Assembly (NCBI RefSeq): GCF_963853765.1
Contig: NC_088854.1
Location: forward strand, 44,702,001 to 44,766,000
Direction of reading: 5' to 3'
From: Magallana gigas
Taxonomy: Eukaryota
Length of the DNA stretch: 64,000 nt
Below are positions 2,530 to 42,711 of this stretch, piece by piece (within the stretch, counting starts at the first letter, position 1; each line of letters opens with the position of its first letter). The translations under genes and the position numbers were made by a program. The notes beneath the pieces are model-generated. The model did not search any database. It was not told the DNA's origin and saw nothing but the letters and a program-made list of their open reading frames with translations.

Positions 2530-3550
2530 AGGCGTAATTGCTTGCTATTTCATCTTCTCCAGAACCATTAGGCCACTTTAAACCAAACAGGCACAAAGCA
2601 TTCTTTTCTCTTTGACATGACCTGTAAGTTTGTTCTTATGGAGGGCAAATTTCCCTTCAAAAAAGGCAAATACATGTAAGTTGGAAAGAGGAAAAATATG
2701 GATTAGTATTTTAAAATCTCTTTCTCCATAACCACTCGGCCAATTTGAAAAAAAACTTCGGTAGATAATTAAGAAAGAGTGAAAATAACGTTGAATAATT
2801 TAAAGTTTTCTTCAGGGCAGTCAAACCAATTTTAACCAAACTTGGCAGTAAGCATCCTTGAAGGTAAGGCTTTCAAGTTTGTTCCAAATGAGGGCTAGTT
2901 TACCTTTCATGTTGGGTATAACTGGGAAAAGGTGAATATGTGCTTTAAAAATCGTTTTCTCAAGAAACAAAAAATCTGATAGGTACAATTAAAACCTTAA
3001 CATTAGCTTTCTGATAAATGGTAGGAAAATCCTAACGCAGGTTCAAAGTTCATAAAATGAATAAGTGGAAGAAAACACATAAATAATTTATCTGAAGAAT
3101 AAAGCGACTTTAATTTGTAATTATCGATAAGGAGGTCGCTTTTACATGACTGTTTAATACCAAATTCTAAGTTCAGCAGTGGGTTTACCACTGTCAGTCA
3201 AAATGAGGTGGGGAGATTGAATTAATAGGTTTTATATAGAAGTTCTTACAAAGCAATCATCTAAAAGATATTCATGTGTACTATTNNNNNNNNNNNNNNN
3301 NNNNNNNNNNNNNNNNNNNNNNNNNNNNNNNNNNNNNNNNNNNNNNNNNNNNNNNNNNNNNNNNNNNNNNNNNNNNNNNNNNNNNNNNNNNNNNNNNNNN
3401 NNNNNNNNNNNNNNNNNNNNNNNNNNNTTAATGAAACCTCGCATCTATGTCAGAGAGTTGATTTAGATTGGATAGCCAGTCCTTGATTCCAAACGCTGTT
3501 GCTAGTTGATAAGAGTTATGGCAAGTTACTTAGGTGAGCGATGTGCCCGC
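2530..3550. mobile_element. Helentron/HINE-like non-autonomous element with satellite-like internal repeats, interrupted by an assembly gap
   Basis: Recurring motifs aaccaaactt..., aagcatcctt, caagtttgttc; ends with taggtgagcgatgtgccc (~3532-3549), like the ends at ~10801, ~13024 and ~17552. Boundaries approximate. Confidence 0.55.
3286..3427. other. Assembly gap (142 N)
   Basis: Run of N directly in the sequence. Confidence 0.99.
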
Positions 3551-5063: not shown

Positions 5064-6882
5064 AGGGTACCTGCAGCCAAGCCGATGTGAAACATATGTC
5101 AAAGAGTTTAATTACCAAAATTGAATGCAAAAAACCGCATCGAAATCGATGCAAAAATAACGGAGTTACGCCGCTTCAAAGTGGCTATTTTTACCTGCTT
5201 TGGGAAATCTAATCAAGAGAAAACAGAATTAGGCGATATCGAGGCTTCAGCGGAAGTGACGTCACGAGGTCAACAGGAGGGAAATTCCTTTACAAAGCTA
5301 TACAAATTAAATTCGATTTTTCAGCCAAAATGACTGACATAGGTCAGATGTTTTGACGTATCTAGTTATTTTAAGTGTTGTAGATTTAGAAATTTATATC
5401 CGTAATTATTTTATTACAGTCAGATTTCTTTTTAAAGGATTTTAAGATTTGCTATTCTCGTCGCCTTTTTACCGATTAATACAATAACTTAAAACACTTG
5501 CATGGGCATATTTATGTTCATTATTCATTTTTTGATTACATAATATCCTTTCACACACGAGTGATCTGAGACAATGACTCAGGTAAACAGGTAAACTAAC
5601 GAAGCCACTGCTCCAGACACACGTGTATCTGGGGTATGTATACACATGGTACACGAGTCTGGTGAACAAAGAGAGGGTTTCACACCTCTAGACTGGTAAA
5701 TTGATTTGTGTATAATTAGCTACTCAATTGTTTAACCAAAAAAAAACCCAGAAATAAATCAGACTCTGCAAAATCAATCATTCGTAAGCTAGGCCTAATA
5801 CATGTGTATAGTCCGTTAATCAGTGATTAAAGAATCATGCATGAGACAATCAAATAGTAAACTAATGTTCGAAGTAAATGCCTTTATTGTTACTTATCTA
5901 ATCACTTAAATAATGACCAAATTTACAATTCAGCAATTTAAACCCTTTTTTATGTGATCAAGTATTTATTTCGGAAGCCCTGTGGTCAGCAGTTTAGTTA
6001 ACGCTTTAACTCCATATAGCTTAAATTGTTATACTGACAACGATTTATTATGAAATCTGAATAAACTTGAACATTTTGACAAAGGATGTAAATAAATGTA
6101 AAATAAAATTCCATTATCGTATTTTTACTGAAAGAATACGAGACAGACTTAATCATGCAGCCATCTTGGACTTTCGCCTTGATCCGTTTATAATACCGTG
6201 TTTTGTTAAAGAATGCATACTATTTTGATTGTTATTGGTCCGATATCAATATTTTTGAATAATCGGCCGACATCATTTGAAATTTTATGCCTTATACGAG
6301 GAATAGACCCCGCGTTACCTTTTACGAAATATGTATTATCAATATTATTAATCAGTTAATAATGTCACGGAAAAACCATTCGAAAGAATGACAATATTAA
6401 CAAATTATGTTTCTTATAAAAATAGGGATTTGATTAATTGTCATTTTGTTACATATGGTGTGCATTTATATGGAAAATGTGTTACACATTTGACTAAATT
6501 CATGAAGCAAACAATTTTCCGAATTCGGCATTTTTGTTCGATAAAATACGGGTTTAAACTCAGACAACAGTATATTTAGTCATCCAGGGTTGATAAGTAA
6601 ATAAAACAACAGAAAAAAATGTTCAGATATCGATAAAACAATGCAAGAAAACGAACAGTTTTCCTACGATATTCCTGTTTCTCATACAGCGGCGTTGACC
6701 CCGTGACGTCACAGCTCATCTCGCGCCAAATCGGCTTGATTCAAAACTCGTTCAGGTGTGAAATCGGGTTTTCCCCAAATATCTCGAAAACTACTTATGC
6801 GATCGCTGTAAAATTTTCAGGATGATGTTTTTACACATAGATCTTCATTATATCAAAAATTGACCGGCACTGCAGGTACCCT
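5064..6882. mobile_element. Non-autonomous TIR element with TTAA target duplication (Kolobok-like), 1.8 kb
   Basis: TTAA(5060-5063)|AGGGTACCTGCAG ... CTGCAGGTACCCT|TTAA(6883-6886): perfect 13-bp TIR with RR/YY termini. No transposase ORF. Confidence 0.75.
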
Positions 6883-7490: not shown

Positions 7491-8079
7491 CTTTCATCTG
7501 AAGTTCTTGAGACAGTGATAATAGTTGATAGTTGTAGTGAAATTATTATACCTTCAGAACAAAATTTAGAAAAGAGATACGACACTATTCACCAACTCAC
7601 TGGTTTGAGATGAAATAAAAAAAGTTTTAATGTTATATAATTTTTCAAGTCAGCTGCAACAAAAGGAATAAAGGCCATGCATGCACACGCACATGAAGGA
7701 TTGTATCATTCAATGCATAAAGTGTTAATTATAAAGCATAATCAAATGAACTAGAAAATTTCAAAGCAAATATTTTGTTTCATATTTTATAGAATTCTCT
7801 CTCAAAAAAGAAAATACTTGGGCGTTTTTATCCAAACATGTTTCATACGCTCTAGCCAAGCTAATGAAGCATTGAATATAATTATGTAGAAACTGCGTTT
7901 TAGCAATATAAAGACTTATAGGCAATTTTAAAGATATGTTTTAAAAACTTTCCATTTTTTCAAACTGTATTCAAACTTATCATGTAAATTTAATTGTCTC
8001 ATTGTTCCACTCAATCTGCTGTTCTATTGCGGTTTGTTTTTAAAATGTGACACTAGTATGTGGTATGTATGCAAGCCTA

Positions 8080-8550
8080 TAGCCGTTCCAAGATATTGTT
8101 TCCATCACTTTTTGATGATTTTTAATAAAAATACACATACCTGTGAAAGAAATACAGTTGAAATCGATGAAAGGGAATATATCAAGATATCTTCATTGAA
8201 CAATTATCATTTTTCACTCATGAAAGTTCACAGGAACGAAAAACAGATTTCTTACGGAGAGTTATAATTGGAAATGTTTACATCTTTTCTCCATTCGGAA
8301 ATACTCGGGATACCTCGCGCAATTTTTCAACGTTATCATCGGGGCTTATTAATGGCTGATGCAATGCAAAATCCCCGTAGACTTTCTATATTTGGATGTG
8401 TATTGAAACCTGAAGCGGTAGAGGGGGCGTTTCAAAACAGATAATCTGGACATTTTTCATATTAGTGGATGAACGAAGTTTGAGCACAAAGGTATTTATC
8501 ATTATCGAAATATCAAGCAAAAAGTGATGGAAGCAAAAACTCGGGACAGA
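8080..8550. mobile_element. ~470-bp TA-flanked MITE (Tc1/mariner-like), diverged copy
   Basis: Aligns over its length with 14509-14982 and 43868-44341; degenerate left TIR tagccgttccaagatattgtttcca, right end ggaagcaaaaactcgggacaga. Confidence 0.85.
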
Positions 8551-9255
8551 TTTTAAAAGAAATTGCGTAGAGTCAAGCTCTTTTGTGCTGTTTGATGCTT
8601 TGTTAAATTACTGAACCTAGTCTCATTGGTAGGATATGCAAAAGTCTTCCCTACCCCCCTCCCCCACCCCACTCCCCTCCGCTTTGAGTTCCTTATTGAA
8701 TACTTTTCATCGATCGCCCACGTCAATTTCGTTTATTATTATTTTGATTTATTGAGTACATGGCACGGGAAAGAGAGATCCTGTCCCGGTTTATTGGCCA
8801 ATCGGTGAGTAGTCATCCATTGTGTTCCACAGAGGTAAACAAAATTTCGCTATCTGACCCTTATATTTGGTGCTTTACCGTATTGGATTTTTTGGACAGT
8901 ACGTTTTCATTCAACCATAGGTATGTATACATATGTTGGTTTTTATCATAAAATGTGTGTAGAAACACACATACTGGAATAAAATTTATTGTTTTCAGCT
9001 CTGAGTGATTACTCATTCATTCCCCTCTACTAATAACTAACTTTCGAAGTATTTTTATTTTATTTTTGTTAAGCTAAACTTCCTAAAAGAACACATATCC
9101 CGCACTGCTATATATATTTATACACACCAGCACTTGACACCAATTTAGTTTGAATGCATATGCATATAGATGTATATAAACCAATCAGATCTTGTTTGAT
9201 TTGTAGAACCTGTTGAAATTTAGGACAAATATCGCTTCTCCCCACCAAGGCAGGC

Positions 9256-12200
9256 ATGTTTACCTTTCTAAGGTAGGATCCTCGACTTCAGAGTGTGACA
9301 ATAGCGGTATTCATTAAATGTTATGTATTCTTACATATTACCAATACCTTTAGTTATAAGGAAAACCAACGTGTAAAAGACCAGACATTCAGTTTCGTAA
9401 AGTACTTAGGCTTAGCCGTAAATATAAAGAGCCATCCATTGATAACTTGCTTGAGGCTAATAATTGTACAGTCATCTTTATGGAGGCTAATGGTCAACAA
9501 ATTAACCGTCAGATTTTTCTTTAAGTCTCAGATATGACGTCTTCAGCTATAAATAATCATTGCAAAAAAAATACGTATTTTTTGGCATAAAAGTTTAAAT
9601 ATTTTGCTATATATTTATAGGAAGGTCTTTTTAACCAGATTTATATAGTGTAAAAATGGCCACGGCCATTTAGCCCTCTCAAACAGCTCAATTCAGAAAA
9701 TGCTTCATGTTCGATGCTAAACTTTCGCTAATCTCTAATGATATATTTACAGAACAAGACCAAATTTTCCTGGTTGAAAAAGCTTTACTTCCCCATACAC
9801 TCAACCCTTGAAACATATCATTGTCGGCTTTTAGAGATGGTTTATTTTTAACTCGAGCATTTCAGAAGCTTTTCAACTAGGGTTTTTATTAAACCAACAC
9901 GTCTATTTGTTAAATAATTAAAGGCAATAGTTAATGCACTTGAAAGACTGTAGGGTATTTCCATATTGCGTAACACAGTTTAAAGCTTCAGCAAGGGTAA
10001 TGATTTAAGATGTGCTGTGCACACTAAACACACACTTTGCGATGTTATTAACGGTTCTTGAATAACTAGTACCAGCATTAAAACTTCTCGTCATCCGTCG
10101 TTACTTCTTCTCTAGAACCAACCCTTTATAAAAGGGAGATAATTGCGAAAAGTGAAATAGGGTGAATGTCTTTAAAATGCTAATATTTAAACAAAAGCTT
10201 GTATATATAGTGAAGATTTTAAATTGATAAAATTATGACCCCGAACTAATACTGGGGCCGCAAAAGATGTTCAATGAGTAACATAAAAATATATAGAATT
10301 TTAAAAATATTCCTCTAAAGAACTATAATGCTACAATTTGTGAGATCACTATGCAGGCATCCTCCTACAATGTAGATTATAAATGTTAAAATCGTGACTC
10401 CTGGACTGATACTGGGGCTCTAAGAGGAGGTTAAAAATTAGCAAAGAAATATATAATGAAAATGTTTAAAAAAACTTCTTCTCAAAAAACTGCAAGCTAT
10501 GCAAGCATTCTTAAATAATGTAGATTCTAAATTGTAAAAATCGCGACGTCTGCACTAATACTTGGGTTCTCAAGAGGGGTTGAAAGTTAGGAAAATGTCT
10601 AGAATATTCATCTCAAGAACTACAGTGTTACAATTTGTTGGACTTCTGTGCAAGCATCCTCATATGATATAGATCATAAATTATTAAAATCGTAACCCTA
10701 GACTAATGCTTGGGCTACAAGAGGGGTTCAGTGTTTAACTTTGAAATATATTGGGAAAATATTAAAAAACTAAAATAAAATGGTAAAATGAACTATTGTT
10801 CAGATGAACGATGTGGCCCACGGGCCTCTTTTAATTGTTTATGTTATTTAAGGAATGAATATAATTTCTACCTATGTTATACGATATAACATAACTTGGG
10901 GCAGTTTACGATTTATAAACCGCGAAGTTATGTTATACTCGTTTAACATAAGTAGAAATTAAATTTATTCCTTATAATTTAATTTTCTACTATTTAAATT
11001 AGATAATAAGGCCCATTAATTAGTTAAAATATGTTAATCTGTACAAAATTTAAACGTAACGTTAAGCGGATTAATACGTTTCGCACGTGCGTCGTATTTT
11101 GACGTAGGCAAGTTATGTTATACGATATATATGAATTTGTTTAGCCAATCAAATGAGGCGTTACAATCAGAATTAACGAGGCCGAGTACAGAACGAGTAC
11201 GCACGCTTTAGCGCAGCGTTTCATTTGTATTGTGACGTCATCTTTTTGCTTTGTTGACGCCATGGCGTGATAGTTTCAACTGCAGCTATTCAGCGAGATT
11301 TGTTGAAAATAGCTCGTTTGATGCGTAAAATTGATATTATATTGTGGAATAAACATAAATGTTTCTAAGTATAAGCTATATTTGGGCTCGGGTCGAAAAC
11401 GTGAAGAGGGTTCAGCAAGCCTAGCCCTCTGTCACGTTTTCTTAACCCGCCTAAATATCGATTAATTCATTTATTTCAAGACATTAACCATGTATTTTAT
11501 ATTAATGACCCTTAAAGGTATACACGCTATAATTTGCGTCAATTTTGAATGACAGTGAAAACGCATGTGTTTGTCTACTTATAAAAGTTATCCTTAATCT
11601 GTAAATTACAATGGTAAATTCCATCTCGTTACAAAGATTTAGATTTTTAATTGTTTATTTTCCTGCCAGGAAAATATACCTTTTCATGAATATTGATGAA
11701 GGAAGAGCGAAACCGACCTCATTGCGCATGTCCGCAGAGAACTAGGTGGTCGTCATTGTTTGCCTAATTAAATATCCAGCTTGATTTTTAATATGCTTAA
11801 CAGTTGTTAATTTGAAATACATACATGTATAATGAGTAAAATACGTTTGTCATTCACGATACCCTTACTTCTGCATTAACACTTATAGGATCTATAAATA
11901 GCACATAGGGGAAAAACACAGGTCTACGTCATTTTTTTTAAAGGAAGTATTCATATCTACTCACAGGCTTTTATTTTTTTCTTTTGTTTGTACTCGTATA
12001 TCGGACAAATTTATGCTTTACTGAAAATATCCTTTCCTTTGTGAAACTATCACAATTATGAAGATGTTGACCCTTCACCAGTTTTGGTATGATAGACTAA
12101 ATTTAGCTGTCGATATCACGTGATAGATTGATATTCACGAGGAGGCATTACTTTCCTGGCAGGAAAATAAATATTTTTTATTGTTTAATATTTGATATAT

Positions 12201-15200
12201 TTGTTACGTGATCGAATTGAGCATTATAATTAACAGCATAAAGGTAACTTTTATTAGTAATCAAACACATACATTTTCCCCTTTATTCAAAATTGACGCA
12301 AATTATAGCGTGTATAGCTTTAATGTGTGATGTTATATATTTATTTATTACTTAAATATGTCTGAATGTTTTAATAATACTATAATGATCACCATTTCCG
12401 TTTTTGTCAAATAAAAAATACTCATTATCTGACAAACTGAGAAATTGGGCATACAAAAAATAACTTTGATAAGACCCCTGAAACAAACCAGGAGGTAAAA
12501 GGTTTTTTTATTTGACCATTTGACGCCTTTTAGCAATAACTTTAATATGTAGAACAGAAAAAGAAATCCCTAGGGCAGAAGTTTAAAAAATGTGAAAAAT
12601 TGGTACATTTCAAGCTAAATCCCATAGGGTCCTATGTTAAAAATTAGCAAACTTTGAAATGACCCCTTAAACAAACGGTGTGGTAAATGTCTTATTTTGT
12701 TTATCTTAAAATAATAATTATATCAGTAGAAATTCTTGTAAAAAATTTTATTCAAAAATCTAGGGCAGAACAAATTAGACCCGGCCTCGTTAAATTATTA
12801 GTTCATTTTCGATTTTGTAATCTTTAATATGTTGAGGGCTAGGATATTTATATTGGTCAATTGTTGCATCTATTAGATCTTAAGATATGATGTCCAAAAA
12901 GTAGGCTTCTTTTTGTGTTGTGTTAATCGTGTTGTGAATTATTTGAATGTTTGAGAGTTTTACAATATCTTTAAAGAATTTCATATTAAAATTTCAAATG
13001 GAAGGATTCAAGAATTGTCGTTCAGGTGAGCGGTGTGGCCCACGAGCCTTCTGTTTTAAATAAATATTTGTTTATGTTTTAAATTTTAGATATGCTTGAT
13101 ATACTTTACTTATTTCTAATATTTTTTTACATGACAATCTCTTTTCAATTTATTATAAACTAAATATACCATCTCCATCTTTTGGCGTTACATGTTCATG
13201 AAATTATATCCATTCATATTTATTGTAGAAATCCCAGCCTCCTCTTCATTATTGTATCACTTCCGGTTCCTGTTGTCACGGACAATGTGGCCCTGCTTGT
13301 GATTGACGTTCAAAACTGTTTTCTTCCCACGGGAACTTTACCGGTGACGGAAGGTGACCTAGTTATACCAATTATCAACGAAATACGCCAAAATTACGAC
13401 AACCTTTTCTCGTTGGTTGTGTTTTCCCAAGATTGGCACTGTGATGACCATGTTTCCTTTGCATCTCAACACAACGGGAAGAACCCATACGACACTACAG
13501 TTCTTCACTACAACAGTACAGGTGAAAATTTTCCCAAAGCTGTAAACAAGATTTCTATTGTATTTGACTCAATTGATCATTTATTTCCCAGTACAAGTAA
13601 GTAATACTATAGATGATGGTCCCACTGCTCTTTACTGTCTTTGCTTTTTACATGTACTAAAGTCAAAATACTTCCATACTAAACAGTTTTTAGTATGGGA
13701 GTCTTTTTTTACTCTAAAGATTTTTCCTATACTATGAATCAACCTCACTTTCCTTTACCAGCTCATGTAAGTCTGTAGCAGCAAAATCAGCACGATAAGT
13801 CTTAAGTACTGGTATTACACAAATATAGCTCATATATATTTGTAAGGTAAGTCTAGGAATGACTGCAGTTCTTATATATACCTGTGCTTAAAAAGTAAGT
13901 TTACATCCACGGATTTTCTATCTGTTACACTGGTTTTAACCCTGTTGAAAGCAGTGTAACGATTAGAAAACGCGTTGATGTCGACGTTAGTTTGCATAAT
14001 GACTCTGCAACTCATTGAAAAACCAGTACATTAAAGTTACAACACAATATATTTGATATACCAGTATTGTAGGTCTTTAGTCTGACTAGTTCTTTCACTT
14101 ACCAGTACATATACATGGATGTACTATTGTGAGCATGGCTGTACAGTTCTTGTACAGGTAAGTAAGGTCAAACAATAACTCTACAGTCCATTATTAATTG
14201 TGATTGTTCAGTTTGTTGATATGTCAGTTATGCAAGTCTACAGTAAAACTCTACAATAGTTCTTTAGCTTACCAGTACATGCAGAAGCCCATTTTAATTA
14301 CTACTACAGATAATTCAATATTTTTATATAGATTCATATAAGTACGTGTACATTTTATGATTGTTCTGTTATTTGACATCAGTAAGTTAAGTTTACGGTT
14401 TGACTTCATAATTTAGTTATTAAAACTTGAAATATCTTAAAATATAATTATATTTACAACATTATTATAATGTATAATAATAATACATGTAATATGGCAA
14501 ATTTACTATAGTCTGTCCCAAGTTATTGCTTCCATCAATTTTTGATGATTTTTAATAAAAATACAGATACCTGTGAAAGAAATACAATTGAAATCGATGA
14601 AAGGGAATATATCCAAGATATCTTCATTGAACAATTATCCCTTTTCACTCATAAAATTCACAGGAACAAAAACAATTTTCTTACGGAGATTTATAATGGG
14701 ATATGTTTACATCTTTTCTCCATTCGGAAGTACTCGGGATACCTCGCACAATTTTTTAATGTTATCATCCGGGCTTATTAATGGCTGATGCAATGCAAAA
14801 TCTCCGTAGACTTTCAATTTTGGGATGTGTATTGAAACCTGAAGCGGTAGAGGGGGCGTTTCAAAACAGATAATCTGGTTATTTTTTATATTAGTGGATG
14901 AACGTAGTTTGAGCACAAAAGTATTTACTATTATTGAAATATCAAGCAAAAAGTAGTGGAAGCAAAAACTCGAGACAGAGAATAACATCTTCAGGAGTAC
15001 AATGTTGTATTATCTTCAATGTAACAACACAGCTAATTAAAAAACCCATGATGTGCTAGATATCGATTTTTTTTTCACGATTTCAAATAATTTCATATAT
15101 CACATAAAAAGATGAACATTTTGAAAAGTAAATAAATCGATTTTAGAGGAGAAAGATATAATTAAACGTTGGGCCAACTCAAAAATATTGACTTTCCTTC

Positions 15201-18200
15201 CGCTTCATAGCCACGCAGGCGCATGGACATGTAAATAATGCGGCGTGGCATATATCATGGACGAACGGCTCTAAGTGAAACCAGATGTCTTTAAGAACTG
15301 CACATCTATTAAAATGCACAATCCATAAAATTAATGCATTTTTCTTCATACGGACATAGAATACCTCTTTTCTCAGTGTGTCAATCCCACTGTAACTATT
15401 TTTAGATGGCAATCGCAATCACGCGACACTCAAATCCCTGTCCAAAATTTACATGTGTAATTCCGGATGAGTTTAACGCCTTGTAAACTGATATGTGATG
15501 ACTTATAATGTGTGAAACTTTCCATATGATGAAATTTTGTATATTTCCTCTCATTTCCGTTGTTATAATCAAAAAGTCAAACATCTTTTTTGAGTCACCG
15601 TGTCACTTTAAGGTGCCTCACTACACCTTAAAAAAGTTTCTCAAATCAGCAGAAAATTACTTGATTATGATAGAAAGCATGATGGATAAGAAGTATATAT
15701 GTCAAATAGGCGAAAAAATGTGCAATTTTAGTTAAAAAATGATATTTTCAAAAATTTCATTCAGTAAATATAAACAATGCCCCAGGTGGATTCGAACTCA
15801 TGACCTGCGGTTCACATCCCTGATACTTTAACCACTGAGATATGACGATATACATCTGAATCGATTGATACAAACAGTTTAACAAAACATTTAATTCGCC
15901 ATCTTGTGACGTAGTGTCTTTAAAAGTATAAGTCTCGGTGTAGTGAAGTACCTTAAATTGACTACTATTTCATGTTTTATATAACGCTAAAGCATAAATT
16001 ATCCTTTTAAGCCTACAATAGTTCTGTCTACATATGATAATACAGCATTCAGTTAGGTAGCCCAATACGTTCGTTAAAAATCAAAGTTTAGTCTACAACA
16101 TGTGTCAAACATGAAAGCACTAAAAATGTTTATTTACTGTAGGAAACCTTTGCGAATCAACGTGTGACGCTCAATACAACATTACCCAAGTCTTGTGGCC
16201 AGATCATTGTATAAAAAACACAGCGGATGCAAAATTCGCTTCGAACATTACCAGAAAAAGCTCTGATGTCGTTGTGCAAAAAGGCTACCATTGCAAGGTC
16301 CGTATATTTACACGTACCTTAATAATGCTTCATGTTTCCTGACTTCCATTTCTTGCTTCTTGCTGTTCATCATAAAGGCAATACTTTTCGAACACTTTTC
16401 GCGCGGATTTTTCGCAAAATAAATACATTTTTATACGCACTTGCGTATCGTTTGTTAATTCTACTTAAATTAAATCCGTGTTGTTGTTGACTTCGTATAC
16501 TTTTCACTTTTCAGGGGTAGGGAGGGGGCACAATGGGGGATCCCATAAGAATACATAGATAGAAAGAAAATCTTCAAAAATCTTCTTCTCAAACACTATT
16601 TGGTCAAAAAAAGCTGGAATATGTCTGGAAGAATCCTTAGGTAGTGTAAATTCAGGTTTCTTCTAATCATGGTGCCCGTGAATAGGTTGGAGTCACACAT
16701 GGGGGATCAAATTTTACATAGGAATATGAGAAAATATTTATAGAGTGAACTTCTAAAAATCTATTAGGCCAAACAAGCTTGAACATTTGTGGAAGCATCA
16801 TCAGGTAGTGTAGATTCAGGTTTGTTCTAATCATGGTTCCCGAATGGGACCACAATATGGGAATGGATTTTTACATAGAAATATATATAGAAAATCTTTA
16901 AAAATCTTCTTCCCAAACACTATTAGACCGGAAAGCTGAAATTTGTGTGGAAGCATTTTCAGGTATTGTAAATTCAAGTTTATTTAAATCATGATCCCTT
17001 CGGTATGGTGGGGCCACAAATGGGGGATATCAAAGTTTTATATATTTAGAATATTAAGAGAAGAAATTTTAAAATCTTCTTGTGAGAAACCATTTGCCCA
17101 GAAAAGCTTAAACTTTGGTGGAAGCATCCTCATGAAGTGTAGATTCAAGTTTGTTCAAATCATGATCCCTGGGGTATGGTGGGGCCACATTGTGGGGGGG
17201 GGGGGGGTCAATTTTTTTTCATAGGAAGATATACATGTAAAGAGAGTCTTTAAAAATTTCTGTAAATGCATTCAGCTTAAAAAGCTGAAAGTTGTGTGAA
17301 AGCTACAGAAAAGTTAGGCCACAGGAGGGAGGGGGGTATTAGGGAACAGAAAACTAATCATTTGATATAGGAATAGAGAAAACTCTTATCACTAGTACCC
17401 AAAAAAAGGGGGGTTGGTGTTTACCATAAAAATATGTGGATAAAAATTGATATTTTTTTATTCTTTGGCAAGATCTACTGTACCTAATTGTCAAGATATT
17501 TTGATTTTGATACTGCAATGCTGATTTGATCAGAGTTATGGCTCTTGTTGATCAGGTTAGCGATGTGGCCCCAGGACCTCTTTATTCTCATTTTTTCATA
17601 ACAATTTTTTTTTCATTTCTAGATCGATTCGTATTCAGCTTTCTTTGACAATGGTGAGTTCAGTCAAACAGAGTTGAACACAAAACTCAAGGGAAAGAAC
17701 GTTGATACCGTTATTATAGTAGGACTTGCTCTGGACTACTGTGTTTATTACACAGCCAAAGATGCCAAGAAATTAGGTACGATTTCCTAGAAGTCTTATT
17801 TTAAAAACACTGTTAAAACGATACTTCATAGATATTAAGGTGGAATGCTACCTTAAGTGTATCAGAAGGATCGGTAGTAGAGTAGCATACCTGAAACATA
17901 TTCCGTTATTTGCTCTTAATTATTGGGTGCGAATTTTTTTAAAAAATTTTTTATAAGAAAGTGGACATTTTTGTTTTGGTTGCAAGTAACACTTTGTAGT
18001 TAAAATGTGGTGTGAATAAATGCATTATATTGATATCTGATTAATTATTTATGGTTAATTAAATACGACTTTTGGTTTTAAAAAAAAAATTAATTATAGA
18101 GGTAAAAACATCTTTTGCTCATAAATTTTACAAACTTAAGGATAATTCATAGAGTCGTGTGTTAAGGAGAATATACTCCAATACATTTTACGGTTGCGCT

Positions 18201-19531
18201 TTTACTATCTACACTTCCACATGAGTGTGTGTTTTCATATGTAATGTCAATTTCGCAGTAGATCATGTCGATGACAATATGACTCTATGTCAGTGACAAA
18301 CAGTGTTGTTATACCCCTGTATAACAGTTACTATATAACTCTATACGAAAAAAAAGTCCAGCATTTTGACTGTTGGACTGGAACTGTTAGATTGGAACTG
18401 TTAAAATCGACTGTTAAAAAAGACTGTTGACCGGTGACGTCACATTCCGCGAAAACGTGTTATTGATTAGAAGGGGTATAACAAAACAGTTGTTGACTGT
18501 GTCTCGGTCAACAGTTGATCTGTCGGACCGGCTCCCAAACTGTTGCCCGCGGCCTTCGGCCGCGGGCAACAGTTTGGGAGCCGGTCCGACAGATCAACTG
18601 TTGCCCTCGACCACAGTCAACAACTGTATAATATTGTCGGTCATGCATGCATCTCTTCGGATAAAGTTTATTATGATTTAGTGAAGACCACTTATAACAT
18701 ACATGGTAATTCAGCAATTATGTTAGCAAATATAAAATATAATACTCAAAATTGTTGTACCTTGTTTGTATTTTATTTTTACAAATAAAATCGGAAAAGA
18801 AAAGTTTAAAAATTTTGAGCTTAAATTATGTCCAAGTCCCTTTAAATGTTCATATCAAAAGTACCTTACTGGATCTTTACATGATATGAATCATAAAATT
18901 TATGCATTTCTGTCTCTTTATGTGTTAAAATAATTTTTCATAACTATCTTAAATTCTTGTTATGTTTTCTGTAAAGTTTAAGGCCATGGTACGTTTTCTC
19001 CTGACACCAGTTTACGACAGTTAAAACGATGCGCGGGTTTAGAGGGAGGGGGTGGGGAGAGAGGGAATTTCCTGGATCCACGCATGCAAATGACAGTTTC
19101 CGTTTGCATGCATATTCTGTCATATTTTCCTATTTGGCCATTAGGGGTAAAAGTTCTTTGAAGTTTGTTGCTGAGTGTAACTTTCACTTAGCTTTCATCA
19201 ATGTCTACACAAAAGTCTACCTTTTTTCCAGGCTACAAAGTTTATGTAGTACAAGATGCCACACGTGCCGTAGCAAATGCAACTTCAATAGACGCGTTGC
19301 ATGACATGAAAGAACGCGGTAAGTAAACTTTCACAACGTACTATAATATTATTACCACTGAATCGAATAAAACCAGTTTATATTTCCTTTCAAGGCGTCC
19401 ATATTGTGCAGTCCTCGCAGATGCCAGATTTGATGGAGAAACTGACAAGTTCCGGCAACATCCCACAGTGCTTTCACCTCATCTGGTATATCGCAGCGTT
19501 TGTGATTTCTCGGAGACTGGCATTTTTCTAA
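9256..19531 (+). CDS. PNC1: Nicotinamidase/pyrazinamidase (isochorismatase superfamily), ~280 aa, with signal peptide and hydrophobic C-terminal tail; 6 coding exons
   Basis: Exons 9256-9272 (MFTFLR; least certain), 13229-13521, 16143-16297, 17623-17776, 19232-19318, 19395-19531; all GT-AG and phase-consistent (843 nt). Motifs: LLVIDVQNCF (catalytic Asp), QDWH...HVSFAS, LWPDHC, VQKG (Lys), DSYSAFFDN, GLALDYCV (Cys), VVQDATRAV. Confidence 0.92.
10080..10830. repeat. Tandem array of ~150-160 bp diverged monomers inside a Helentron/HINE-like element
   Basis: Monomer core ...ctaatactggggc...aagaactata..gctacaatttgtg...gcaagcatcct..tgtagatt recurs near 10236, 10395, 10545 and 10692; element end atgtggcccacgggcctctt at ~10811-10830. 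Confidence 0.75.
10848..10973. repeat. Fold-back (palindromic) element with asymmetric tail
   Basis: taaggaatgaatataatttctacctatgttatacgatataacataactt ... aagttatgttatactcgtttaacataagtagaaattaaatttattcctta form imperfect inverted arms. Confidence 0.7.
11516..12319. mobile_element. TTAA-flanked MITE (Kolobok-like), 804 bp
   Basis: TTAA(11512-11515)|AGGTATACACGCTATAATTTGCGTCAATTTTGAAT ... ATTCAAAATTGACGCAAATTATAGCGTGTATAGCT|TTAA(12320-12323): 35-bp TIR with 1 mismatch, plus internal inverted ttttcctgccaggaaa. Confidence 0.85.
14509..14982. mobile_element. ~470-bp TA-flanked MITE (Tc1/mariner-like) in nicotinamidase intron
   Basis: ta|tagtctgtcccaagttattgcttcca ... tggaagcaaaaactcgagacagag; near-identical to 43868-44341. 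Confidence 0.88.
15612..15952. mobile_element. TTAA-flanked TIR element containing a tRNA-derived segment
   Basis: TTAA(15608-15611)|GGTGCCTCACTACACC ... GGTGTAGTGAAGTACC|TTAA(15953-15956). The minus strand of ~15781-15847 reads tctcagtggttaaagtatcagg...gagttcgaatccacctggg (A/B-box-like). Confidence 0.8.
16510..17583. repeat. Tandem array of ~165-bp satellite monomers (resembling oyster Cg170-type satellite) inside a Helentron/HINE-like element
   Basis: aatcatg(g/a)t..cc recurs at ~16665, 16830, 16988 and 17158 with a shared aaaatcttcttc...aaagct...ggaagcat...gtagtgtagattcaagtttg body; element end gatgtggccccaggacctctt at ~17562-17582. Confidence 0.8.
18486..18627. repeat. Long palindrome with a perfect 46-bp inner stem and TTC/GAA triloop
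   Basis: 18509-18554 is the exact reverse complement of 18558-18603; loop TTC at 18555-18557. Confidence 0.92.
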
Positions 19532-19654
19532 TTTGATTACTCTTCATGTTATATATAGTACAGCTATGTACCGAGTATTAAGTACCAACAATCTTTAAAG
19601 ATATTTTCCATGTATATATATGTATTTACAAAGTACATAATTCACATATTTCAT

Positions 19655-19760
19655 GCCAGAATATTACGAGGCGATAATTTCGGTCGGGGTGTGACCAAAT
19701 CTATCATATACCCTTCCGGTTTCATTGGATTTGACCATGCCCCAACCAAACTCATCACCT
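19655..19760. repeat. Degenerate copy of the palindromic family at 36942-37100, just downstream of the nicotinamidase stop
   Basis: gataatttcggtcggggtgtgaccaaatct...cccttccggtttcattggatttgacc matches the 36942 element. Confidence 0.7.
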
Positions 19761-20397
19761 TTAATTCTCGTTTACAATGTATATTTGCCTTTTACTGTTT
19801 ATACATGCATAATTATGTTGTTTTAAACCATTTTATGACTTTATAATATTTCCCATGCGCCATATAGCATAAAAAGCATATACACTGTTCATGTGGCCTA
19901 CAAAACAACTCAAATGCCATTTCGTGATACAAAATGTATGAAAGACAAGGAATTATAATACCTGTAAATTTTAAACATAGTGAATTGGTTGTGAATTAAA
20001 GACAAAATCACATTACAGTGCCTTCACCTTTATTTATAATGATGATTGAATATTGAACGTATCAAACAATAAAGAGATTGGAAAGCAGAACAACCAACAC
20101 ACAATATAGACACTGCTTCATTATTTAGAAGTCAGTTTGGCGCCAAATTATAAAGTTGACATCCTGATTCTGTTTAGCTTTTTTTCTGGGGGTTTTGGGG
20201 GTTTTTTTGCATTATTTTTTATTTCCTAACAATTAAAGAAATATCAAAACGGCGATAAACAAACTGAAATATTATCTCTTTTTATGCTCTAAGTTAGTGA
20301 TTTCCAAATAATAAGCATTTTGCTGCTATCGGTACATAAACATTACACAGAAGTAATATGACTATGCCAAAAAATGCATGGTTTGTATACGAAATCT

Positions 20398-40653: not shown

Positions 40654-42711
40654 ATGGCCAAGACAGGACGCGGAGATATAAAAGTGAATGAGAGATTCCT
40701 GACGTGTGGTCTGTGCAGCCAGTGGTTCACTCAGCCCCGGACCTTACCCTGCCTCCATTCCTACTGCGAGAACTGTCTGTCCAAGCACATTCATGACTAC
40801 ATTGCCAAGTCCAGCGTCAAAAAGGGGAGTCAAACCGCCCACCCGACGGAGTATGTGTGTCCCACGTGTAACAAGGCCATCAATGTGTCCAAGTTCTCCT
40901 CGCAGTCCGCCAAAAACTGGACAACCAAGTTTCCCCTTAACACGTTCCTTATGGATCTACTGGACGTGGAACTCCTGATGAGGGGCGAGAAAACTTGTGG
41001 TCCGTGTACACGTAATGGCGACCGATCGGACGTAGTTTCCTGGTGCAAAGAATGCCGGGACGGGCTCTGCAAGAACTGCTCCAAGGTTCATCGTGGAATG
41101 CGTGTGTCCATGGACCACACAGTGCTTAGCAAGGAAGAGTTCATGAAGCACGTTTCTCTGCTACAGGAACAACAAGAGCCGTGTCAGAAACATCCGGGCA
41201 AGACACTGGACATGTACTGTATGACGGACAGGGAACTCTGTTGTCCGAACTGTGTGGCGGAAGAACACAGGCGCTGTGACCGAGTTGTGTCCGTGATGGA
41301 CGCGGTCAAGCAGAGCCGTCTGGACAAAACGCCGGAGTTCCTCAAGAAAAACCTTGAGGAATACAACGAGCACATAGAGAAGGTCATCGCATCCAGAACC
41401 AACAAGTTGCTGAGCCTGGACGAACAGAAAACCAAGCTTATTGACGAGTTTGCTCAAATTCGCATTAACGTCATAAATATTCTGGACAAAATGGAGAAAG
41501 CTATCAAGAAGGAGCTCTCTGACATACATTCTGGGGAAACCAAGGCAATGGAGAAAGAGGTGAGCAAGTCTAGGAAGATACAATCGGCGGTAACAAATGC
41601 GCATGAATTGCTGAACGTTACAGAAAACCATGGGTCCGACTCCAACCTCATGAAAACTATTGAAGAGGTCAAGAGGGAATGCCTGTGGTACGAAGAGGAG
41701 ATGGGTAAACTGAGGAGCAAAATTCAAGACTGTGAGTACGTTTTCGAAATCGACGAGCATATAGAAACATTGCTCAACAAAGTGAAAAAATACGGAGAAT
41801 TGAAAGTCCGCCACTCGCCCTCAAAACTGCAACCCTTCCCCAACACCGTGACGATTGAAAAGTCGATCGAGCAAGGGAAACAATTCAAGTCTACCCTGTC
41901 TTTGAAAGGGCGAAAAGCAGAACTCGCGAAAGCATTTGATGCCAAAATGGAAGATGACATTAAAGACTGTTGGTACACTGGGGCCGCATTCCTTAGCGAT
42001 GGAAGATTTGTACTGGTGGATCGTTCTAATCGAAAACTGAAGCTATTCAGCAAGAACTACCGGCTTCTGAACAGCATCTTTTTCACAACGAAACCTTGGG
42101 ATGTGACAGTTGTTGGGGAGAACGAAATCGCCGTGACACTTCCGGAGGAGCACGGGATACAGCTTCTGACCACGGGGGACTCCATTAAAATGTCGGACTA
42201 CTTTACCACGGAGGAAGCTTGCTTCGGAATCAAGCACGTGCGAGGAAAGTTCTTCGCTCTTTGCTACGACGGAAAGCCTCCGGCATTGAAAGTTATTTCT
42301 TCAGACGGAAGGGAACTTGCAGCCATTGGAGTTGATGACGACGGATCTCCGTTATTTTCACGGCCGATATATGTAACGTCAAATAACGCCGGTACCGTGA
42401 TCTTCGTGTCAGACGAACGCCGAGGTTGTATCACGTGTCTTACGGAAACCTCCGAGCATTGTTACACCTATTCCACAATAGATCTCAGCCATGTAGCAGG
42501 AATAACGTTGGATCGTGAAGGCAACCTCTATGTTTGCAGGAACCATGCAAAAAGCGTGCAAGTTGTAACACCCGAGGGAGACCGCATAAAGACCATCGTG
42601 TCACGAGAGGAAATTACGTATCCACGTGCTATTGCATACGACGAGAAAGAGGATCGTCTGCTCATAACTCAGGGGGATAAGAGCGTAGTCAAAATATTCC
42701 AGTTCGAGTAA
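40654..42711 (+). CDS. TRIM-family E3 ligase: RING, B-box1, B-box2, coiled coil, NHL-like beta-propeller (TRIM2/3/56/71-like), 685 aa, intronless
   Basis: RING CGLC...CLHSYCENC...CPTC; B-box CGPC...WCKECRDGLCKNCSKVH; B-box CQKH...YCMTDRELCCPNCVAEEH; helical middle region; repeats such as GRFVLVDRSNRKLKLF and GITLDREGNLYVC. Confidence 0.96.
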   Translation: MAKTGRGDIKVNERFLTCGLCSQWFTQPRTLPCLHSYCENCLSKHIHDYIAKSSVKKGSQTAHPTEYVCPTCNKAINVSKFSSQSAKNWTTKFPLNTFLMDLLDVELLMRGEKTCGPCTRNGDRSDVVSWCKECRDGLCKNCSKVHRGMRVSMDHTVLSKEEFMKHVSLLQEQQEPCQKHPGKTLDMYCMTDRELCCPNCVAEEHRRCDRVVSVMDAVKQSRLDKTPEFLKKNLEEYNEHIEKVIASRTNKLLSLDEQKTKLIDEFAQIRINVINILDKMEKAIKKELSDIHSGETKAMEKEVSKSRKIQSAVTNAHELLNVTENHGSDSNLMKTIEEVKRECLWYEEEMGKLRSKIQDCEYVFEIDEHIETLLNKVKKYGELKVRHSPSKLQPFPNTVTIEKSIEQGKQFKSTLSLKGRKAELAKAFDAKMEDDIKDCWYTGAAFLSDGRFVLVDRSNRKLKLFSKNYRLLNSIFFTTKPWDVTVVGENEIAVTLPEEHGIQLLTTGDSIKMSDYFTTEEACFGIKHVRGKFFALCYDGKPPALKVISSDGRELAAIGVDDDGSPLFSRPIYVTSNNAGTVIFVSDERRGCITCLTETSEHCYTYSTIDLSHVAGITLDREGNLYVCRNHAKSVQVVTPEGDRIKTIVSREEITYPRAIAYDEKEDRLLITQGDKSVVKIFQFE

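What the first reader, a model, noticed from the sequence alone, without database searches (positions are those of the whole stretch)
9256..19531. Nicotinamidase with a signal peptide and GPI-like C-terminal signal: a candidate cell-surface NAM-clearing ecto-enzyme
Seen: the spliced protein keeps the Asp/Lys/Cys catalytic triad and metal-binding D/H/H motifs. It starts MFTFLRNPSLLFIIVSLPVPVVT|DN and ends ...KLTSSGNIPQCFHLIWYIAAFVISRRLAFF, i.e. small residues S-S-G, a short spacer and a hydrophobic tail. It has four N-glycosylation sequons (NST, NIT, NIT, NAT). Established: most nicotinamidases are cytosolic, vertebrates lack the enzyme, C. elegans PNC-1 has a secreted isoform, and nicotinamide is an agonist of invertebrate TRPV channels (OSM-9/OCR-4, Nanchung/Inactive). 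Inference: a GPI-tethered form could terminate extracellular nicotinamide signalling or feed NAD salvage at epithelial or sensory surfaces. I know of no description of a membrane-tethered form in molluscs.
Basis: partly seen in the sequence, partly recalled or inferred. Interest (0 to 1): 0.72.

Follow-up and report, generated by a model that had tools for sequence, protein, structure and literature searches.

The report
Oyster nicotinamidase built for the cell surface
This oyster gene encodes a real, expressed nicotinamidase that carries a secretion leader and a hydrophobic C-terminal tail shaped like a GPI-anchor signal, and many molluscs, amphioxus and an annelid share this layout, so the enzyme probably works on the outside of cells, but no experiment has shown that yet.

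Summary
A public transcript contig reproduces all six coding exons and both termini. The doubtful 17-nt first coding exon is joined to exon 2 in contigs from four runs of four studies. An in-frame stop 13 codons upstream fixes the start at 9256.

The protein is a nicotinamidase. It passes the curated NCBIfam equivalog cut-off, matches solved nicotinamidases, and keeps D32/K150/C195 and D74/H76/H125.

The leader and tail are a family trait, not chance. All 48 eukaryotic relatives with a C-terminal extension end in a hydrophobic segment. These relatives form a single well-supported clade. The clade also has extra conserved cysteines and 1.8-fold enriched N-glycosylation sequons.

The same genome holds a second, leaderless and tail-less EF-hand nicotinamidase, plus NAMPT and NAPRT. 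The window gene therefore looks like a dedicated extracytoplasmic enzyme.

GPI anchoring is the best reading of the tail, at about 0.5. This species' tail is suboptimal: 13 hydrophobic residues followed by SRRLAFF. No GPI predictor could be run. The proposed role in TRPV signalling is untested speculation.

I found no paper describing a membrane-tethered nicotinamidase. This is a new variant of a known enzyme, and the interest is moderate.

The parts
6846..6875 (+). 5'UTR exon (its 5' end is not defined); non-coding
   Evidence: Bases 1-30 of transcript contig L007 align here at 100% identity. The loose end of run X1 before 9205 carries the same letters.
8693..8920 (+). Alternative 5'UTR exon, spliced to 9207; non-coding
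   Evidence: The joint 8920->9207 (GT..AG) occurs in runs X10 and X7. The in-frame stop before ATG 9256 is retained in this form.
9207..9272 (+). First coding exon. The start codon is at 9256, so 17 coding nt encode MFTFL plus 2 nt.
   Evidence: L007 aligns over 9202-9272. The joint 9272->13229 occurs in four runs of four studies. An in-frame TGA lies 13 codons upstream of the ATG.
13229..13521 (+). Coding exon 2. It encodes the rest of the leader (up to about residue 23, 13229-13280), strand beta-1 with catalytic D32 (13305-13307), and the metal-binding motif QDWHCDDH (D74, H76).
   Evidence: The exon's words occur in 20 runs of 11 studies.
16143..16297 (+). Coding exon 3. It encodes the C107/C111 loop, metal ligand H125, the sequons at N116 and N138, and catalytic K150 (16280-16282).
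17623..17776 (+). Coding exon 4. It encodes the DSYSAF motif and the catalytic cysteine C195 (17740-17742).
   Evidence: Pfam Isochorismatase match at E 3e-8.
19232..19318 (+). Coding exon 5. It encodes the end of the catalytic domain and the sequon at N222.
19395..19823 (+). Last exon. The coding part runs to the TAA stop at 19529-19531, followed by at least 292 nt of 3'UTR.
   Evidence: L007 bases 785-1213 align here.
19424..19528 (+). C-terminal extension beyond the nicotinamidase fold (residues 246-280). The candidate omega triplet S254-S255-G256 lies at 19448-19456. The hydrophobic core C261-I273 lies at 19469-19507 and is followed by SRRLAFF.
   Evidence: Alignments to solved structures and folds end at residues 244-247. 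Heuristic scan. Mean pLDDT is about 68-83 over residues 251-280 (blocks of ten), with a helix modelled over 242-279.

Best explanation
The gene encodes an active-site-intact nicotinamidase, which converts nicotinamide and water to nicotinic acid and ammonia. The enzyme is made in the secretory pathway. A cleavable N-terminal signal peptide (about residues 1-23) takes it into the ER, where it is glycosylated and probably disulfide-bonded. The C-terminal 27 or so residues act as a GPI-attachment signal: omega at about S254, a short spacer, then a hydrophobic tail. The catalytic domain therefore ends up tethered to the outer face of the plasma membrane, where it deamidates extracellular nicotinamide.

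Shown here: the gene model and its expression, the enzyme family and catalytic residues, the presence and conservation of the leader and tail, and a separate intracellular paralogue.

Inferred: cleavage of the leader, GPI attachment, the surface location, and any physiological role (feeding NAD salvage through nicotinic acid uptake and NAPRT, or lowering extracellular nicotinamide).
For: Gene model: a transcript contig matches all six coding exons. The exon 1-2 joint occurs in four runs of four studies. The start codon is fixed by an upstream in-frame stop.

Enzyme identity: NCBIfam equivalog NF008623 scores 185 bits against a cut-off of 174. The solved A. baumannii nicotinamidase 2wt9 matches at E 1e-48 over residues 24-244, and yeast Pnc1 2h0r also matches. 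The AF2 model has mean pLDDT 92, and its best fold matches are reviewed nicotinamidases over residues 24-247. D32, D74, H76, H125 and C195 are invariant and K150 is present in 55 of 56 relatives.

Secretory route: the leader has a basic n-region (R6), a hydrophobic core LLFIIVSL and V-x-T at -3/-1, and it ends 2-3 residues before strand beta-1. Orthologues have equivalent leaders with unrelated sequences. Sequons are 1.76-fold enriched in the clade, against 0.67-fold in bacterial relatives. Cysteines at positions 36, 77, 107 and 111 are conserved in the clade, and 107/111 are missing in the two bacterial rows.

Tail: all 48 eukaryotic relatives with an extension of at least 25 residues end in a hydrophobic segment. 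The median best 12-mer hydropathy is 2.6. A median of 4 residues follow the core. The last 20 residues hold 0-3 charges. The 12 residues before the core are rich in small residues.

Clade and context: the leader-bearing eukaryotic sequences, most of which also carry the tail, form one clade with 97% SH-aLRT support. The same genome holds a leaderless, tail-less EF-hand nicotinamidase, P0252, plus NAMPT and NAPRT.
Against: No dedicated predictor (SignalP, NetGPI, PredGPI, big-PI) could be run. My scans are simple hydropathy and small-residue rules with no calibration.

This species' tail is among the weakest in the clade. It has a 13-residue hydrophobic core that includes a histidine, followed by S-R-R-L-A-F-F. 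Two arginines near the end are unusual for GPI signals.

Threonine at -1 is an uncommon signal-peptidase site.

There is no protein-level, localisation or activity evidence for any member of this clade.

The runs are coded, so tissue of expression is unknown.
Confidence: 0.5

Rival explanations
1. The enzyme enters the secretory pathway, but the C-terminal hydrophobic segment is a conventional transmembrane anchor. That would make it a type I membrane protein with a tiny cytoplasmic tail, not a GPI signal. It would still be a membrane-tethered ecto- or luminal nicotinamidase.
For: In this species the hydrophobic core is followed by S-R-R, which resembles a positive-inside stop-transfer. Some relatives have 19-22-residue hydrophobic segments followed by a few polar residues, such as P0006, P0160, P0163 and P0167.
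Against: The window protein's uninterrupted hydrophobic core is only 12-13 residues, too short to span a plasma membrane. Most relatives end within 0-5 residues of the hydrophobic core with no charged cytoplasmic tail. Most also have S/G/A-rich stretches 6-12 residues upstream, which is the GPI pattern.
Confidence: 0.15
2. The enzyme enters the secretory pathway but is not surface-tethered. It might be released as a soluble extracellular enzyme, like the secreted PNC-1 isoform reported in C. elegans. Alternatively it might reside in the lumen of the ER, Golgi or lysosome. The tail would then be an inefficient or vestigial signal in this lineage.
For: The tail of the two closest oyster sequences is degenerate, with R/H/K/Q inside the hydrophobic part. 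Some clade members lack the tail altogether and end in short polar sequences, some resembling ER-retrieval motifs (...HTDL...SEDL): P0176, P0183, P0187, P0188 and P0208. So soluble or luminal forms exist in the family.
Against: The hydrophobic tail is retained in all five oyster sequences examined despite free sequence drift, which argues for selection on the property. Only one 3' end was seen in the transcript evidence.
Confidence: 0.2
3. The hydrophobic termini do not target the protein anywhere, and it is an ordinary cytosolic nicotinamidase of NAD salvage.
For: Most characterised nicotinamidases are cytosolic, and all top reviewed fold matches lack extensions.
Against: The leader and tail lie outside the conserved fold and are conserved as properties across the clade. 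Sequons are enriched and extra cysteines are conserved. A distinct leaderless paralogue exists in the same genome.
Confidence: 0.05

Closest known systems
Cytosolic nicotinamidases PncA/Pnc1 (A. baumannii 2wt9, E. coli P21369, yeast Pnc1 2h0r/P53184)
   Same: They share the isochorismatase-like fold, the Asp/Lys/Cys triad and the Asp/His/His metal site. Identity is 33-39% over residues 24-247. The protein passes the nicotinamidase equivalog model.
   Different: Those enzymes are 213-235 residues with no leader and no tail. The window protein adds about 23 N-terminal and 35 C-terminal residues, four sequons, an extra loop with C107/C111, and cysteines at positions 36 and 77.
C. elegans PNC-1, secreted isoform (Vrablik et al. 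2009, cited from memory and from reference lists; the paper could not be read here)
   Same: It is an animal nicotinamidase that leaves the cytosol through a signal peptide, and it controls nicotinamide levels that act on TRPV channels (PMC5064019).
   Different: In the worm, one gene is reported to give secreted and intracellular isoforms. In the oyster the two locations appear to be split between two genes, and the exported one has a membrane-tether-like tail. Whether PNC-1 belongs to the same clade was not tested.
EF-hand nicotinamidase (own-genome paralogue P0252, 361 aa; a 357-aa solved nicotinamidase 9u8m matches residues 97-294 of its chain; I recall Drosophila Naam being of this type, from memory)
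   Same: It has the same catalytic domain and lies on the same chromosome, about 2.8 Mb away.
   Different: It has N-terminal EF-hands, no leader, no hydrophobic tail, and QNDF/WHP in place of QNCF/WHC. It lies outside the leader-bearing clade in the tree.
Vertebrate GPI-anchored ecto-enzymes of NAD and nucleotide metabolism (CD157/BST1, ART1-4, CD73); established knowledge
   Same: They show the same predicted topology: signal peptide, catalytic ectodomain and C-terminal GPI signal. They also act on extracellular NAD-related metabolites.
   Different: Their folds and reactions are unrelated. Some of them produce nicotinamide, whereas this enzyme would remove it. No homology exists.

Membership tests
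Nicotinamidase (PncA/Pnc1, isochorismatase-like cysteine hydrolase) | Isochorismatase-like fold | tested here: met
   Pfam PF00857 matches exons 2 and 4. The AF2 model has pLDDT 92 and matches reviewed nicotinamidases at TM 0.89-0.93 by hit.
Nicotinamidase (PncA/Pnc1, isochorismatase-like cysteine hydrolase) | Catalytic triad Asp-Lys-Cys | tested here: met
   D32, K150 and C195 align with yeast D8, K122 and C167. In 56 relatives they are invariant, 55 of 56, and invariant respectively.
Nicotinamidase (PncA/Pnc1, isochorismatase-like cysteine hydrolase) | Metal-binding Asp/His/His | tested here: met
   D74 and H76 (in QDWHC) and H125 (in WPDHC) are invariant in 56 relatives.
Nicotinamidase (PncA/Pnc1, isochorismatase-like cysteine hydrolase) | Score above the curated equivalog threshold | tested here: met
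   NF008623 scores 185.1 bits against a cut-off of 174. The next family (biuret amidohydrolase) scores 40 bits against a cut-off of 370.
Nicotinamidase (PncA/Pnc1, isochorismatase-like cysteine hydrolase) | Nicotinamide deamidase activity | not testable with these tools
   This needs an enzyme assay on recombinant protein.
GPI-anchored protein | N-terminal ER signal peptide | tested here: met
   The n-region is MFTFLR, the h-region is LLFIIVSL, and the c-region is PVPVVT with V at -3 and T at -1. The leader ends just before beta-1 and is conserved as a property in orthologues. This is a heuristic reading only; SignalP was not available.
GPI-anchored protein | Omega site of small residues (omega, omega+2) followed by a 5-10-residue spacer | tested here: met
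   S254-S255-G256 lies 7 residues before the hydrophobic core. Equivalent TS[SGAD][GA] clusters occur in oysters, scallops and mussels.
GPI-anchored protein | Hydrophobic tail of about 10-20 residues running to the C-terminus with no cytoplasmic extension | tested here: inconclusive
   The core CFHLIWYIAAFVI (13 residues, 12-mer hydropathy 2.1) is followed by SRRLAFF. Two arginines there are atypical. Most relatives have cleaner tails.
GPI-anchored protein | Positive call by a trained predictor (NetGPI, PredGPI, big-PI) | not tested
GPI-anchored protein | PI-PLC release or lipid-anchor chemistry | not testable with these tools
   This needs bench work.
Soluble secreted nicotinamidase (C. elegans PNC-1a type) | Signal peptide with no membrane-binding segment in the mature protein | tested here: not met
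   The leader is present, but a terminal hydrophobic segment is also present.
EF-hand (Naam-type) nicotinamidase | N-terminal EF-hand domain, no leader | tested here: not met
   The window protein has no EF-hand. That architecture belongs to the paralogue P0252.

The most novel reading that the evidence does not exclude
Molluscs, annelids, amphioxus and some protists keep a dedicated clade of GPI-anchored ecto-nicotinamidases, separate from the intracellular EF-hand enzyme. Extracellular conversion of nicotinamide to nicotinic acid would then be an old, distinct arm of NAD metabolism or vitamin B3 signalling that vertebrates lost together with the enzyme.
Probability: 0.4. Interest if true: 0.65.

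Novelty: new variant of a known kind. Interest (0 to 1): 0.5.

Why it matters
Nicotinamidase is usually treated as a cytosolic NAD-salvage enzyme. If a whole clade is displayed on the cell surface, invertebrates would control extracellular nicotinamide with a dedicated enzyme.

Nicotinamide is a sirtuin/PARP product and a proven agonist of invertebrate TRPV channels (PMC5064019).

Such an enzyme would be a functional counterpart to the vertebrate ecto-enzymes CD38/CD157/ARTs, some of which release nicotinamide.

It would also explain why oysters keep two nicotinamidase genes alongside NAMPT and NAPRT. The claim is directly testable with PI-PLC release and activity assays.

Tried and rejected
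- **Minor alternative exon.** An exon at 12901-13025 is joined to exon 2 in one 151-nt contig of run X10. It has no in-frame ATG and cannot give a nicotinamidase ORF. I treat it as non-productive, probably repeat-derived.
- **Upstream start codons.** All three 5'UTR forms keep an in-frame stop before ATG 9256.
- **tRNA-like stretch.** I suspected one near 15780-15850, but ARAGORN finds no tRNA in 9000-20000.
- **ADP-ribosyl cyclase in the own genome.** PF02267, a possible source of extracellular nicotinamide, gave no match. The control genomes were silent too, so this is uninformative.
- **Literature.** Searches for nicotinamidase with GPI, glycosylphosphatidylinositol, signal peptide or secreted returned only coincidental co-mentions by title and abstract; I did not open those papers. 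The metazoan NAD-salvage survey PMC3665594 does not mention localisation. Vrablik 2009 (PMC2761111) is not held, so the secreted PNC-1 isoform is cited from memory.
- **Earlier findings of this scan.** They hold only this same note.
- **Disulfide geometry.** It could not be checked because model coordinates are not returned.
- **Breadth of the clade.** Named members come from molluscs, Branchiostoma, Owenia and Balamuthia. No echinoderm, cnidarian, arthropod or nematode name appeared among the best 120 hits of two searches. That is not evidence of absence.
Full report

They join in frame to an 843-nt CDS of 280 codons plus stop. The product starts MFTFLRNPSLLFIIVSLPVPVVTDN and ends ...KLTSSGNIPQCFHLIWYIAAFVISRRLAFF. 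It has sequons at N101, N116, N138 and N222.

The weakest element was the 17-nt first coding exon, which lies 4 kb upstream of exon 2. It is now well supported.
- A 1223-nt public transcript contig (L007) aligns to 6846-6875 (a 5'UTR exon), 9207-9272, 13229-13521, 16143-16297, 17623-17776, 19232-19318 and 19395-19823.
- Its ORF, P0151, has the same termini and differs from the window's protein at three residues (64, 179 and 242). It represents a cluster of 143 near-identical sequences. One of these is a RefSeq protein named nicotinamidase-like isoform X1 of Crassostrea (Magallana) angulata.
- I laid contigs of four runs from four studies on 7600-13599. All four show the 9272->13229 GT..AG joint.
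- The 5'UTR is variable. It uses exon 6846-6875, exon 8693-8920, or an unspliced 8937-9272. Every form keeps an in-frame stop 13 codons before ATG 9256, so the start codon is fixed.
- A rare joint from 13025 to 13229, seen in one small contig, has no in-frame ATG and is non-productive.

**2. What is the protein?**

It is a nicotinamidase.
- It passes the curated NCBIfam equivalog for nicotinamidase/pyrazinamidase at 185 bits against a cut-off of 174. The next family is far below its own cut-off.
- Its best solved relatives are the Acinetobacter baumannii nicotinamidase 2wt9 (E 1e-48, residues 24-244) and yeast Pnc1.
- An AlphaFold2 model built on 56 relatives has mean pLDDT 92. Its best reviewed fold matches are nicotinamidases covering residues 24-247.
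- D32, K150 and C195 (the triad) and D74, H76 and H125 (the metal site) are invariant or nearly so.
- The fold therefore occupies residues 24 to about 247. About 23 N-terminal and 35 C-terminal residues lie outside it. These are the low-confidence parts of the model.

**3. Are the two extensions meaningful?**

The N-terminal extension has the three parts of a signal peptide: a basic n-region, an eight-residue hydrophobic core, and a proline-containing c-region with V at -3 and T at -1. It ends two to three residues before strand beta-1.

The C-terminal extension has S-S-G, a seven-residue spacer, a 13-residue hydrophobic core and then SRRLAFF.

Neither extension is conserved in sequence, but both are conserved as properties.
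- Orthologues from other oysters, scallops, mussels, Dreissena, Mactra, gastropods, Branchiostoma and the annelid Owenia all begin with a hydrophobic leader.
- Most of them end with a cluster of small residues followed by a terminal hydrophobic segment.
- Among 48 eukaryotic relatives with an extension of at least 25 residues, all have such a segment. The median best 12-mer hydropathy is 2.6. A median of four residues follow the core. There are 0-3 charges in the last 20 residues. Half of the 12 residues preceding the core are small.
- That pattern is expected of GPI-attachment signals. It is not expected of type I membrane proteins, which usually carry charged cytoplasmic tails.

Other marks of the secretory pathway go with it.
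- N-glycosylation sequons are 1.76-fold over the shuffled expectation in the clade, against 0.67-fold in bacterial relatives.
- Cysteines at positions 36, 77, 107 and 111 are conserved in the clade. The solved cytosolic enzymes have other residues or a gap at these positions, and the two bacterial rows in the alignment lack the C107/C111 loop.

In a maximum-likelihood tree the eukaryotic sequences with a leader, most of which also carry the hydrophobic tail, form one clade with 97% SH-aLRT support. One sequence labelled as a metagenomic archaeon nests inside it.

**4. Context in the genome**

The same chromosome carries a second nicotinamidase gene about 2.8 Mb away. Its transcript-derived product, P0252 (361 aa), has N-terminal EF-hands, no leader and no hydrophobic tail. 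It has the cytosolic-type motifs QNDF and WHP. In the tree it lies outside the leader-bearing clade.

The genome also encodes NAMPT and NAPRT. This matches the published finding that lophotrochozoans keep both nicotinamide salvage routes while vertebrates lost nicotinamidase (PMC3665594).

Intracellular salvage is therefore already provided for. This makes a specialised extracytoplasmic job for the window gene more likely.

The neighbours in the window are an intronless AMP-binding enzyme ORF and a RING/B-box/NHL ORF. They have no evident link to this gene.

**5. Most likely mechanism, and how sure**

- Entry into the ER and an extracytoplasmic catalytic domain: about 0.85.
- Some form of membrane tether: about 0.65.
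- GPI anchor specifically: about 0.5.

The main reservation concerns this species' tail. The hydrophobic core is short, contains a histidine, and is followed by two arginines. No trained predictor could be run.

The rivals are a short transmembrane anchor (0.15), a soluble or luminal enzyme with an inefficient tail (0.2), and an ordinary cytosolic enzyme (0.05). Clade members that lack the tail, some ending in ER-retrieval-like motifs, show that soluble or luminal forms exist in the family.

It rests on solid worm and fly data for the agonist (PMC5064019). Nothing here tests it in a mollusc. I rate it as speculation.

**6. Novelty**

The gene and its orthologues are already named nicotinamidase-like by annotation pipelines, so the enzyme identity is not new.

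I found no paper that describes a GPI-anchored or otherwise membrane-tethered nicotinamidase. The survey of metazoan nicotinamidases does not discuss localisation.

The finding is best filed as a new variant of a known enzyme kind, and it is shared by a clade rather than unique to this locus. It is moderately interesting and cheap to test.

Noticed in passing
G000:C2:47500095-47505020 (loci L002, L004, L006): A second nicotinamidase gene lies about 2.8 Mb downstream on the same chromosome. Its product, P0252 (361 aa), has N-terminal EF-hands, no leader and no hydrophobic tail, so it is presumably the intracellular enzyme.
   Followed up: yes
proteins P0176, P0188, P0208, P0212, P0213; P0207 versus P0208: Some members of the leader-bearing clade lack the hydrophobic tail and end in ...HTDL, ...SEDL or ...TEDL, which resemble ER-retrieval motifs. 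P0207 and P0208 share an N-terminus but differ at the C-terminus, one with the tail and one without.
   Followed up: partly
proteins P0217-P0251: The nearest bacterial relatives carry 40-residue leaders with an RR motif followed by a hydrophobic stretch, like twin-arginine leaders. This suggests periplasmic nicotinamidases.
   Followed up: no
protein P0209: A sequence labelled 'MAG: nicotinamidase [archaeon]' nests inside the eukaryotic leader-bearing clade in the tree. This suggests a mis-binned contig or a gene transfer.
   Followed up: no
window 18501-18611: An inverted repeat with 54-nt arms (94% complementary, 3-nt loop) sits in intron 4. It looks like a hairpin-forming mobile element remnant.
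   Followed up: partly
window 8000-8600, 10000-10600, 11000-12800: Repeats upstream of exon 1 (8000-8600) and in intron 1 are covered by very many short RNA-run contigs at high depth, with many sequence variants. They are probably dispersed repeat families transcribed elsewhere in the genome.
   Followed up: no
window 26172-27878 (+) and 40654-42711 (+): Two long uninterrupted ORFs were found: a 568-aa AMP-binding (acyl-activating) enzyme and a 685-aa RING/B-box/NHL (TRIM-like) protein.
   Followed up: partly
protein P0155 (Crassostrea virginica): The database model starts 19 residues upstream of the methionine that corresponds to the window protein's start. If real, this would bury the leader; it may be an annotation artefact.
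   Followed up: no
window 3286-3427: A run of N (an assembly gap or masked stretch), left untouched.
   Followed up: no
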